Assembly (NCBI RefSeq): GCF_006345805.1
Contig: NC_043018.1
Coordinates: 18,042,001 to 18,106,000, forward strand
Length of the DNA: 64,000 nt
Origin: Octopus sinensis
Taxonomy: Eukaryota
Direction of reading: 5' to 3'
In this document: piece after piece, positions 60,791 to 61,392 of the stretch
Numbering within the stretch: the first letter of the stretch is position 1
Layout of the letters: every line of letters starts with the position of its first letter
The notes under the pieces: model-generated
The model's database searches: none
The model's input: the letters and a program-made list of their open reading frames with translations, nothing else
Told to the model about the DNA's origin: nothing
Position numbers and translations under genes: made by a program

Positions 60791-61392
60791 TGTTTCTTTA
60801 TTAGCCACACAGGGCTGCACACAGATAGAACAAATTACAAGGTAGAGCTTTTCTTTTGAAGGTTTAAAAAAAAAAAAAAAAAAAAAAGGAAGGGGGAGTT
60901 TCGATCAAAAGGGATCGTAAAAGGAGAGAAAGAGGACAAAAAAAAGGGGGGTTAAAAAAAAAAAAAAAGGGGGAGAGGAAAAAAAATTGATCAATAGGGA
61001 TCGTTATCACAGAAATGTCAATATGAAGTGTAAAGGGGAGGACAGGTGAGGTTTACCCGTGGAAAGAGAAGCCTACGGAAAAGACCACGGTAACCTCGGT
61101 CAATGAAGTCACATTTTATATTTCTTTTTTTTTTTTTTTTTTTTTTTTTGCAAATAAGCAACTCTCTGTTTTCGATTTCTGGGTTCATAGGACTATGCTC
61201 AAGGTGGCTTCGTCATTCATACGTGCCATTCTTGCTACATTCACCCATCTTTTTTTAAAACATTCGCTAGACAAAACTTGCCTCTCTACTCTCACTTTCC
61301 TTTTCAAGTGGTACTTGAAGAAGTTGATGAGAGATTGACCAGAGAGGAAAGTGTTTGTCTCCAATCCTTTCAGACGCGTCCACCAGAAAGAA
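60791..61392 (-). mobile_element. 5'-truncated Tx1/L1-like LINE (ORF2 C-terminus plus ~390-bp 3' UTR)
   Basis: FWWTRLKGLETNTFLSGQSLINFFKYHLKRKVRVERQVLSSECFKKRWVNVARMARMNDEATLSIVL* (stop at 61185) fits the W..R...F...ER....F...W pattern after the L1/Tx1 zinc knuckle. Ends aataaagaaaca and is flanked by TAGA/TA repeats. Confidence 0.65.

What the first reader, a model, noticed from the sequence alone, without database searches (positions are those of the whole stretch)
60791..60845. The SINE-C tail matches the 3' end of a Tx1/L1-like LINE
LINE end (minus): ccttgtaatttgttctatctgtgtgcagccctgtgtggctaataaagaaaca. SINE-C tail (about 46856-46903): ccttgtttgtcctatctatgtttagccccttgtgggcaataaagaaata. 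They align over about 50 nt to the last base. L1-group enzymes in mammals mobilise SINEs without a shared tail, so a stringent-type SINE partner of a Tx1-like element is unusual. Tx1 endonucleases are often sequence-specific, which could explain the fixed-junction arrays. Older SINE-C copies (7686-7730, ~44200-44260, ~54590-54650) have a different tail, implying a partner switch.
Basis: partly seen in the sequence, partly recalled or inferred. Interest (0 to 1): 0.75.

Follow-up and report, generated by a model that had tools for sequence, protein, structure and literature searches.

The report
Orphan SINE-type tail, no LINE attached
A 50-base stub in an octopus genome really does match the tail of the abundant local SINE, but it is a lone, cut-short retrocopy with no LINE body attached, so the claim that it is the end of a Tx1/L1-like LINE has no support here.

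Summary
The sequence match is real. Window 60791-60843 (minus strand) aligns with the last ~50 nt of the 231-nt octopus SINE ("SINE-C"), right to the final base. Identity is 78-83%, and no shuffle out of 2000 came near the score.

The stub is not the end of a recognisable LINE. No RT, endonuclease or other LINE coding remnant lies upstream of it or anywhere in the 64 kb. The upstream sequence is a unique pyrimidine-rich low-complexity stretch. The only LINE remnants in the window are RTE-type, and their 3' ends do not resemble the tail.

Eleven of 13 tail copies (window plus 20 kb of O. bimaculoides) sit on SINE-C bodies. Two are orphans confined to the tail module, and their upstream flanks are unrelated.

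My best reading is a severely 5'-truncated retrocopy of a tail-bearing element. It could come from the unidentified autonomous partner or from an old SINE lineage.

One SINE-C copy has a perfect 12-bp target-site duplication, which points to an AP-endonuclease-type LINE. The clade could not be determined, because no more octopus DNA was reachable.

Older SINE subfamilies do carry a different tail, so tail exchange is supported. Shared SINE/LINE tails and tail swapping are textbook. Interest is low.

The parts
60791..60843 (-). Orphan copy of the SINE-C tail module. It corresponds to SINE-C consensus nt 182-231 and ends …AATAAAGAAACA.
   Evidence: nhmmer E 7e-13
60755..60791 (.). (TA)n microsatellite directly abutting the 3' end of the orphan tail
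   Evidence: (TRF)
60846..61150 (-). Upstream flank: a pyrimidine-rich low-complexity stretch with T27, T16 and T8 runs and an internal duplication. It is not LINE-like and has no other copy in 84 kb of octopus DNA.
46766..46904 (+). 5'-truncated SINE-C copy whose tail (46849-46904) is the closest match to the orphan
49690..49739 (+). Second orphan tail. Local alignment places it at SINE-C consensus nt 174-231, which reaches a few bases upstream of the nhmmer span given here. It is followed by (TA)n and then by an RTE 3' stub on the opposite strand.
43722..43952 (+). Full-length SINE-C (231 nt)
45570..45800 (-). Full-length SINE-C (231 nt), inserted in the head of another tRNA-like SINE
52616..52900 (-). 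SINE-C with a 5' triplicated 17-mer and a perfect 12-bp target-site duplication GGTGTACCAGAC
7850..8082 (-). Full-length SINE-C. Its tail is joined at …AAATA|GGTATTTC to an older-subfamily SINE.
14261..15044 (+). One full SINE-C followed by a 185-bp tandem array (4.0 units, 96% matches) of head-truncated SINE-C units
7630..7849 (-). Older SINE subfamily: same body, different tail
44060..44260 (+). Older SINE subfamily with the alternative tail
54590..54800 (-). Older SINE subfamily with the alternative tail
62819..63110 (+). RTE-type LINE ORF2 C-terminal remnant. RTE is the only LINE type recognisable in the window, and its 3' end is unlike the SINE-C tail.
4248..4295 (-). RTE 3' stub, 85% identical to the 63-kb copy, ending in a microsatellite

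Best explanation
Window 60791-60843(-) is a solitary, severely 5'-truncated retrocopy of the ~50-60-nt 3' tail module that the abundant 231-nt octopus SINE ('SINE-C') carries.

Inferred mechanism: an RNA ending in …GCCCYKTGTGGSYAATAAAGAAAYA was recognised through this tail by the reverse transcriptase of an AP-endonuclease-type LINE. Reverse transcription was primed at a nicked target next to, or generating, a (TA)n tract. It stopped after ~50 nt, leaving only the tail.

The fragment is a clear outlier among SINE-C tails. Both orphans in the window stop inside the tail module. I therefore think the template was more likely the autonomous partner, or a sister element sharing the tail, than SINE-C itself. 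I regard this only as slightly more likely than the old truncated SINE copy of rival 1.

The partner's clade is unknown. It is not the RTE family seen in the window. Nothing shows that it is Tx1 or L1.

Shown: the homology, its extent, the absence of a LINE body, the 12-bp target-site duplication of a SINE-C copy, and the tail difference between subfamilies. Inferred: the template identity and the truncation mechanism.
For: - Homology to the last base: score 50, against a maximum of 28 in 2000 shuffles; blastn E 1.5e-6.
- A tail profile finds 13 copies in 84 kb: 11 on SINE-C bodies and 2 orphans.
- The orphans cover only consensus nt 182-231 and 174-231, and their upstream flanks match neither the SINE-C body nor each other.
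- The fragment is 78-83% identical to SINE-C tails, whereas those tails are on average 91% identical to each other.
- This falls in the published range for mollusc SINE-LINE tail homologies: 35-61 bp, 72-95% (PMC11481361).
- Extreme 5' truncation of LINE copies is seen directly in this window: RTE stubs of ~50-70 nt at 4248-4295 and ~49765-49835.
- A perfect 12-bp target-site duplication flanks the SINE-C at 52616-52900. This fits target-primed reverse transcription by an AP-endonuclease LINE.
- Octopus vulgaris has recently active CR1, L1-Tx1, RTE and Dong-R4 families as candidate partners (PMC13282606).
Against: - No LINE carrying this tail was found, so a LINE-lineage origin is not demonstrated.
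- SINE copies vastly outnumber LINE copies, so an old truncated SINE copy is nearly as likely.
- The second orphan carries the SINE-C 'GGGCAATAAAGAAATA' variant exactly.
- The two orphans share no upstream sequence. So at least one is truncated inside the module, or they come from different elements.
- No target-site duplication is visible around the fragment.
- The predicted small hairpin in the tail is no more stable than in shuffled sequence.
Confidence: 0.45

Rival explanations
1. The fragment is an old, 5'-truncated copy of SINE-C itself, or of an early SINE subfamily with the same tail, that has drifted about 16-20%. No LINE is involved at this locus.
For: - SINE-C is by far the commonest carrier of this tail: 11 of 13 copies.
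- A 5'-truncated SINE-C exists at 46766-46904.
- The fragment shares 'CTATCT' and 'AATAAAG' states with SINE-C variants 46880 and 7852.
- Older SINE copies with about 25% divergence are present in the window.
- No LINE body is attached.
Against: - Truncation of a 231-nt SINE to its last 50 nt is uncommon.
- Both orphans stop within 14 nt of the body/tail module boundary.
- The fragment lies outside the range of variation among SINE-C tails: 78-83% against a mean of 91% and a minimum of 82%.
Confidence: 0.35
2. One reading: the fragment is the 3' end of a Tx1/L1-group LINE that mobilises SINE-C through a shared tail, and its sequence-specific endonuclease explains the fixed SINE-SINE junctions.
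For: - L1-Tx1 families are recently active in Octopus vulgaris: 13 families, 421 insertions (PMC13282606).
- RepeatMasker finds Tx1-like pieces in octopus transcripts.
- The 12-bp target-site duplication fits an AP-endonuclease LINE.
- Three SINE-C 3' junctions start with GGTRT: 7850, the 14.4-kb array, and the target-site duplication at 52.6 kb. This hints at a nick-site preference.
Against: - No Tx1/L1 RT, endonuclease or ORF1 sequence occurs anywhere in the window.
- Nothing ties the tail to that clade rather than to CR1, L2 or others.
- The upstream flank is unique low-complexity DNA.
- The array has a regular 185-bp period with 96% matches and a 371-bp higher-order period. This indicates tandem duplication, as in bivalve SINE arrays.
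- Other SINE-C insertion sites do not share the motif.
Confidence: 0.1
3. The partner is the RTE family that is known to be active in octopus, and the fragment is an RTE 3' end.
For: - RTE is the only LINE type with remnants in the window.
- It is the LINE with published evidence of activity in octopus (PMC9115989).
- RTE 3' stubs also abut microsatellites.
Against: - Direct comparison shows no similarity between the tail and the three RTE 3' ends in the window.
- In RTE the ORF runs to within a few bases of the microsatellite, which leaves no room for this tail.
Confidence: 0.03

Closest known systems
SINE-LINE pairs with a shared 3' tail (stringent-type recognition; Ohshima and Okada; Kajikawa and Okada 2002). 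In molluscs: HCD-tRNA SINEs of bivalves with CR1, CR1-Zenon, L2 and Nimb partners (PMC11481361).
   Same: - A ~50-60-nt 3' module is shared to the last base, at about 80% identity. This is within the published 35-61 bp and 72-95% range.
- SINE subfamilies with the same head and body carry different tails (mosaic evolution).
- Tandem SINE arrays are present.
   Different: No autonomous LINE carrying the tail has been identified here. The non-SINE copy is a 50-nt orphan.
Octopus tRNA-derived SINEs OK, OR1 and OR2 (Ohshima and Okada 1994; Repbase class SINE/tRNA-Core)
   Same: - An abundant octopus SINE with a pol III-type head.
- The same tail occurs in an O. vulgaris transcript and in O. bimaculoides chromosome CM046608.1.
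   Different: I could not compare SINE-C with the OK/OR consensus sequences because they are not held by the tools. A CORE-type SINE is present in the window as a separate family (e.g. 43600-43715).
Tx1-clade LINEs and their SINEs (SINEU mobilised by Tx1-Mar in crocodilians, PMC4494074)
   Same: It is a precedent for a SINE depending on a target-specific Tx1-group LINE.
   Different: In that case the link was shown by shared target preference and by identified Tx1 families. Here no Tx1 sequence is present and no consistent target is shown.
RTE-2_OV and the octopus RTE LINEs (PMC9115989)
   Same: RTE ORF2 C-terminal remnants and 3' stubs followed by microsatellites are present in the window. 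One is 72-80% identical in DNA to O. bimaculoides LOC106868641.
   Different: The RTE 3' end has no similarity to the SINE-C tail.

Membership tests
SINE-LINE pair with shared 3' tail | The SINE 3' end is homologous to a non-SINE copy, up to the very last base | tested here: met
SINE-LINE pair with shared 3' tail | The homologous tail lies at the 3' end of an element that encodes RT and endonuclease | tested here: not met
   There is no coding remnant upstream of 60845 or anywhere in the window. The upstream sequence is unique.
SINE-LINE pair with shared 3' tail | The LINE protein mobilises the SINE in trans through the tail | not testable with these tools
   This needs a retrotransposition assay.
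Tx1 / L1 group non-LTR retrotransposon | An RT domain that groups with Tx1 or L1 in phylogeny | tested here: not met
   No RT motif or Pfam RVT hit occurs in any frame of the window.
Tx1 / L1 group non-LTR retrotransposon | An N-terminal AP-type endonuclease in ORF2 | tested here: not met
   No Exo_endo_phos hit. The 12-bp target-site duplication of a SINE-C copy shows only that some AP-endonuclease-type LINE was at work.
Tx1 / L1 group non-LTR retrotransposon | Sequence-specific target (Tx1) or a poly(A) 3' end (L1) | tested here: inconclusive
   The tail ends …AAAGAAAYA with no poly(A). Three junctions start with GGTRT but the others do not.
RTE clade LINE | The 3' end of the RTE copies resembles the SINE-C tail | tested here: not met
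tRNA-derived SINE (for SINE-C itself) | A head recognisable as tRNA-derived, with A and B boxes | tested here: inconclusive
   A B-box-like GAGTTCAAATTCC is seen by eye. ARAGORN and Rfam find no tRNA, even at E<=1.
tRNA-derived SINE (for SINE-C itself) | A short, high-copy element with defined ends, flanked by target-site duplications | tested here: met
   Four copies of 230-231 nt; 13 tails in 84 kb; a 12-bp target-site duplication.

The most novel reading that the evidence does not exclude
The orphan is a truncated copy of a Tx1-clade LINE that drives the most abundant octopus SINE through a shared ~50-nt tail. It nicks at a preferred GGTRT site that also occurs between the A and B boxes of tRNA-like SINE heads. 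This would create recurrent SINE-into-SINE junctions that seed tandem arrays.
Probability: 0.08. Interest if true: 0.5.

Novelty: new member of a known kind. Interest (0 to 1): 0.22.

Why it matters
SINEs make up roughly 4-12% of octopus genomes and have been linked to genome rearrangement and neural expression. I found no published statement of which LINE mobilises them.

A defined tail module gives a direct handle for finding the partner in a full assembly. That handle is ~50-60 nt, ends …AATAAAGAAAYA, and is absent from older subfamilies.

As it stands the finding adds only an ordinary example of a shared or exchanged SINE tail. It does not establish a Tx1-SINE partnership.

Tried and rejected
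1. Pattern scans for the tail found nothing in metagenome contigs (two scans), viral contigs or prokaryotic genome contigs. There is no cephalopod DNA in those collections.
2. A protein search with the SINE-C antisense peptide, meant to harvest octopus loci, gave one 543-bp ENA contig only.
3. A protein search with the window's RTE remnant found no shared words.
4. The exhaustive representative search gave P0002. A further search with P0002 returned only itself, O. bimaculoides LOC106868641. That yielded a single 20.4-kb locus, L001, much of it N-runs.
5. Exact look-ups of window ORFs 47202-47612(-) and 62766-63101(+) were not on record.
6. k-mers of the fragment, its 5' half and the SINE-C body were searched in the stored 400 kb of the O. 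vulgaris transcriptome supplement. Only one SINE-C tail hit appeared, and none of the 60791-type variant.
7. A full-text search for SINE-C k-mers in the paper library found nothing.
8. RNA folding of the tails predicted a 4-bp hairpin (GCCC…GGGY or AGCC…GGCU), but it is no better than in shuffled sequence.
9. I rejected the idea that the two orphans share a LINE 3'UTR, that the fragment extends into the SINE body, and that RTE is the partner.

Full report
**Context**

The window is cephalopod DNA, from Octopus.
- Its dominant SINE occurs with 86-96% identity on O. bimaculoides chromosome CM046608.1 (locus L001).
- The last 21 nt of that SINE are found exactly in an O. vulgaris transcript.
- The window's RTE remnant matches O. 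bimaculoides LOC106868641.
- The window is rich in microsatellites and carries one 100-N assembly gap at 23220-23319.

**Observation**

The quoted string is at 60791-60845 on the minus strand. blastn against the window gives 80.9% identity over 47 nt to 46861-46907, with E 1.5e-6.

A gapped local alignment runs from CCTTG (60843) to the terminal …AAAGAAACA and into the following TAT. It has 43 of 55 columns identical, one 3-nt indel and 9 substitutions. It scores 50, against a maximum of 28 in 2000 shuffles.

The core motif occurs 11 times in the window against 0.01 expected.

**Anatomy of the SINE**

Four copies define a 230-231-nt element:
- a head, GGCGGCGAGCTGGCAG…GAGTTCAAATTCC;
- a body, …GACTTTGCCTTTCATCCTTTCGGGGTCGATAAATTAAGTACCAG…GTAATCGACTTA;
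- a tail module of ~60 nt ending …TTTAGCCCCTTGTGGGYARTAAAGAAATA.

The copy at 52616-52900(-) is flanked by a perfect 12-bp target-site duplication, GGTGTACCAGAC. So the element moves by target-primed reverse transcription, with the staggered cut typical of AP-endonuclease LINEs. ARAGORN and Rfam do not recognise the head as a tRNA.

Three older copies (7630-7850-, 44040-44280+, 54560-54810-) share head and body up to GTAATCGACTTA. Beyond that they carry another tail, and those tails resemble one another. Tail exchange between subfamilies is therefore supported.

**What the fragment is attached to**

Nothing LINE-like.
- Six-frame reading of 60846-64000 shows no RT, endonuclease or zinc-knuckle remnant on the minus strand.
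- Regular-expression scans for RT and endonuclease motifs over the whole window hit only one RTE-type C-terminal motif, on the plus strand at about 62.9 kb.
- Pfam scans of the 300 largest stop-free pieces found no RVT or Exo_endo_phos family.
- The 330 nt upstream of the fragment are a pyrimidine-rich low-complexity stretch with T27, T16 and T8 runs. It has no other copy in the window or in L001.
- On its 3' side the fragment abuts a (TA)n tract at 60755-60791.

**Census of tails**

A profile built from the tails finds 13 copies in 84 kb (window plus L001). Eleven continue upstream into the SINE-C body. Two are orphans: 60791-60841(-) and 49690-49739(+).

The orphans align only to consensus nt 182-231 and 174-231. 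Their upstream flanks match neither the SINE body nor each other.

SINE-C tails are on average 91% identical to each other. The 60791 fragment is 78-83% identical to them by local alignment. It is closest to the GGGCAATAAAG variant at 46880.

**The LINEs that are present**

The only recognisable LINE remnants are RTE-type:
- an ORF2 C-terminus at 62819-63110(+), 72-80% identical in DNA to the O. bimaculoides gene LOC106868641;
- two 3' stubs of ~50-70 nt at 4248-4295(-) and ~49765-49835(-).

Each ends in a microsatellite right after the ORF. This matches the published description of RTE-2_OV (PMC9115989). Their 3' ends show no similarity to the SINE-C tail, so RTE is excluded as the source of the tail. 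The stubs also show that extreme 5' truncation of LINE copies is common in this genome.

**Attempts to find the partner**

No cephalopod DNA is present in the searchable contig collections. The protein route produced only one octopus locus, L001, much of it N-runs. Two window ORFs are not on record. k-mers of the fragment are absent from the stored part of an O. vulgaris transcriptome.

The literature gives the candidates. Recently active LINE superfamilies in O. vulgaris are Dong-R4, CR1, L1-Tx1 and RTE (PMC13282606). I found no published octopus SINE-LINE partnership. The 12-bp target-site duplication argues, by inference, for an AP-endonuclease clade (CR1, L2, Tx1/L1 or similar) and against a restriction-like-endonuclease element such as Dong-R4.

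**Interpretation**

The fragment is an orphan, 5'-truncated retrocopy of the tail module.

Three points favour a template other than SINE-C proper, meaning the autonomous partner or a sister element:
- it is an outlier among SINE-C tails;
- both orphans stop inside the module;
- LINE stubs of this size are seen here directly.

Three points favour an old truncated SINE copy:
- SINE copies are in huge numerical excess;
- the second orphan carries a SINE-C variant exactly;
- the two orphans share no upstream sequence.

I put these at roughly 0.45 and 0.35. The specific Tx1/L1 claim is a subset of the first and has no evidence of its own. I give it about 0.1.

The homology length and identity sit squarely in the range reported for mollusc SINE-LINE pairs: 35-61 bp and 72-95% (PMC11481361). 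The phenomenon, if real, is ordinary. A SINE dependent on Tx1-group LINEs already has a precedent (SINEU, PMC4494074).

**Side claim on arrays**

The 14305-15042 array has a 185-bp period, 4.0 copies and 96% matches, with an equally good 371-bp period. This indicates tandem amplification, as described for bivalve SINE arrays.

The founding junction …AAATA|GGTATTTC recurs at 7850 with an older-subfamily SINE downstream. The independent target-site duplication at 52.6 kb also begins with GGTGT. This is a hint of a nick-site preference. It deserves a genome-wide logo, but it is not evidence for Tx1.

**Verdict**

The 'LINE end' and 'Tx1/L1' claims are unsupported. The tail switch is supported. 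Novelty is low, and the partner LINE remains to be identified in a full genome.

Noticed in passing
window 14305-15042 (+); junction also at 7850/7849 (-): There is a 185-bp tandem array of head-truncated SINE-C units: 4.0 copies, 96% matches, with an alternative 371-bp period. The same junction, …AAAGAAATA|GGTATTTC, recurs at 7850, where the downstream SINE is an older subfamily with a different tail. So the junction seems to have arisen at least twice.
   Followed up: partly
window 52616-52900 (-), 7850, 14489: Three SINE-C 3' junctions begin with GGTRT: the 12-bp target-site duplication GGTGTACCAGAC, and GGTATTTC twice. This may be a nick-site preference of the unknown partner endonuclease. 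Other copies (43952, 45570, 46904, L001) do not show it.
   Followed up: partly
window 45530-45860 (-): This full-length SINE-C sits inside the head of another tRNA-like SINE (…GTGACCTAGTGGTTAAGCG… upstream, …GGGTTTCGATTCCC downstream). It lies about 24 nt upstream of the B-box-like motif. That is the same relative position as the GGTATTTC junction in SINE-C heads (about 25 nt).
   Followed up: partly
window 52845-52900 (-): The SINE-C copy with the perfect target-site duplication starts with three tandem copies of GGCGAGCTGGCAGAATC, the first 17 nt of the element.
   Followed up: no
window 49690-49835: An orphan SINE-type tail (+) and an RTE 3' stub (-) face each other tail-to-tail across a (TA)n/(TATACA)n microsatellite. 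The RTE stub at 4248-4295 (-) also ends in a microsatellite.
   Followed up: partly
window 6687-7040, 8892-9238, 13358-13692, 16924-17262, 32628-32986, 58323-58662, 43600-43715; L001 11837-12180: A second abundant ~340-nt repeat carries a CORE-like motif (…GGCACCTTGGGCAAGTGTCTTC…). Its copies are 86-90% identical to the L001 copy. It is probably the OR/OK-type CORE-SINE of octopus.
   Followed up: no
window 60866-60990 (+) and 61121-61149: A purine-only low-complexity block (A27, A8, A16, A8 separated by G-rich runs) contains an internal duplication of GATCAA(A/T)AGGGATCGT. A T29 run lies 130 nt further on. Its origin is unexplained.
   Followed up: no
window 59814-60266 and 61394-61601: Long (ATAG)n (114 units) and (GATA)n (52 units) microsatellites bracket the region of the finding.
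   Followed up: no
window 23220-23319: A run of exactly 100 N is present. It is an assembly gap.
   Followed up: no
window 28895-29215 (+): An ORF here gives a weak match to the helix-turn-helix domain DUF4817 (E 0.01, below the Pfam cut-off). It may be a decayed DNA-transposon transposase.
   Followed up: no
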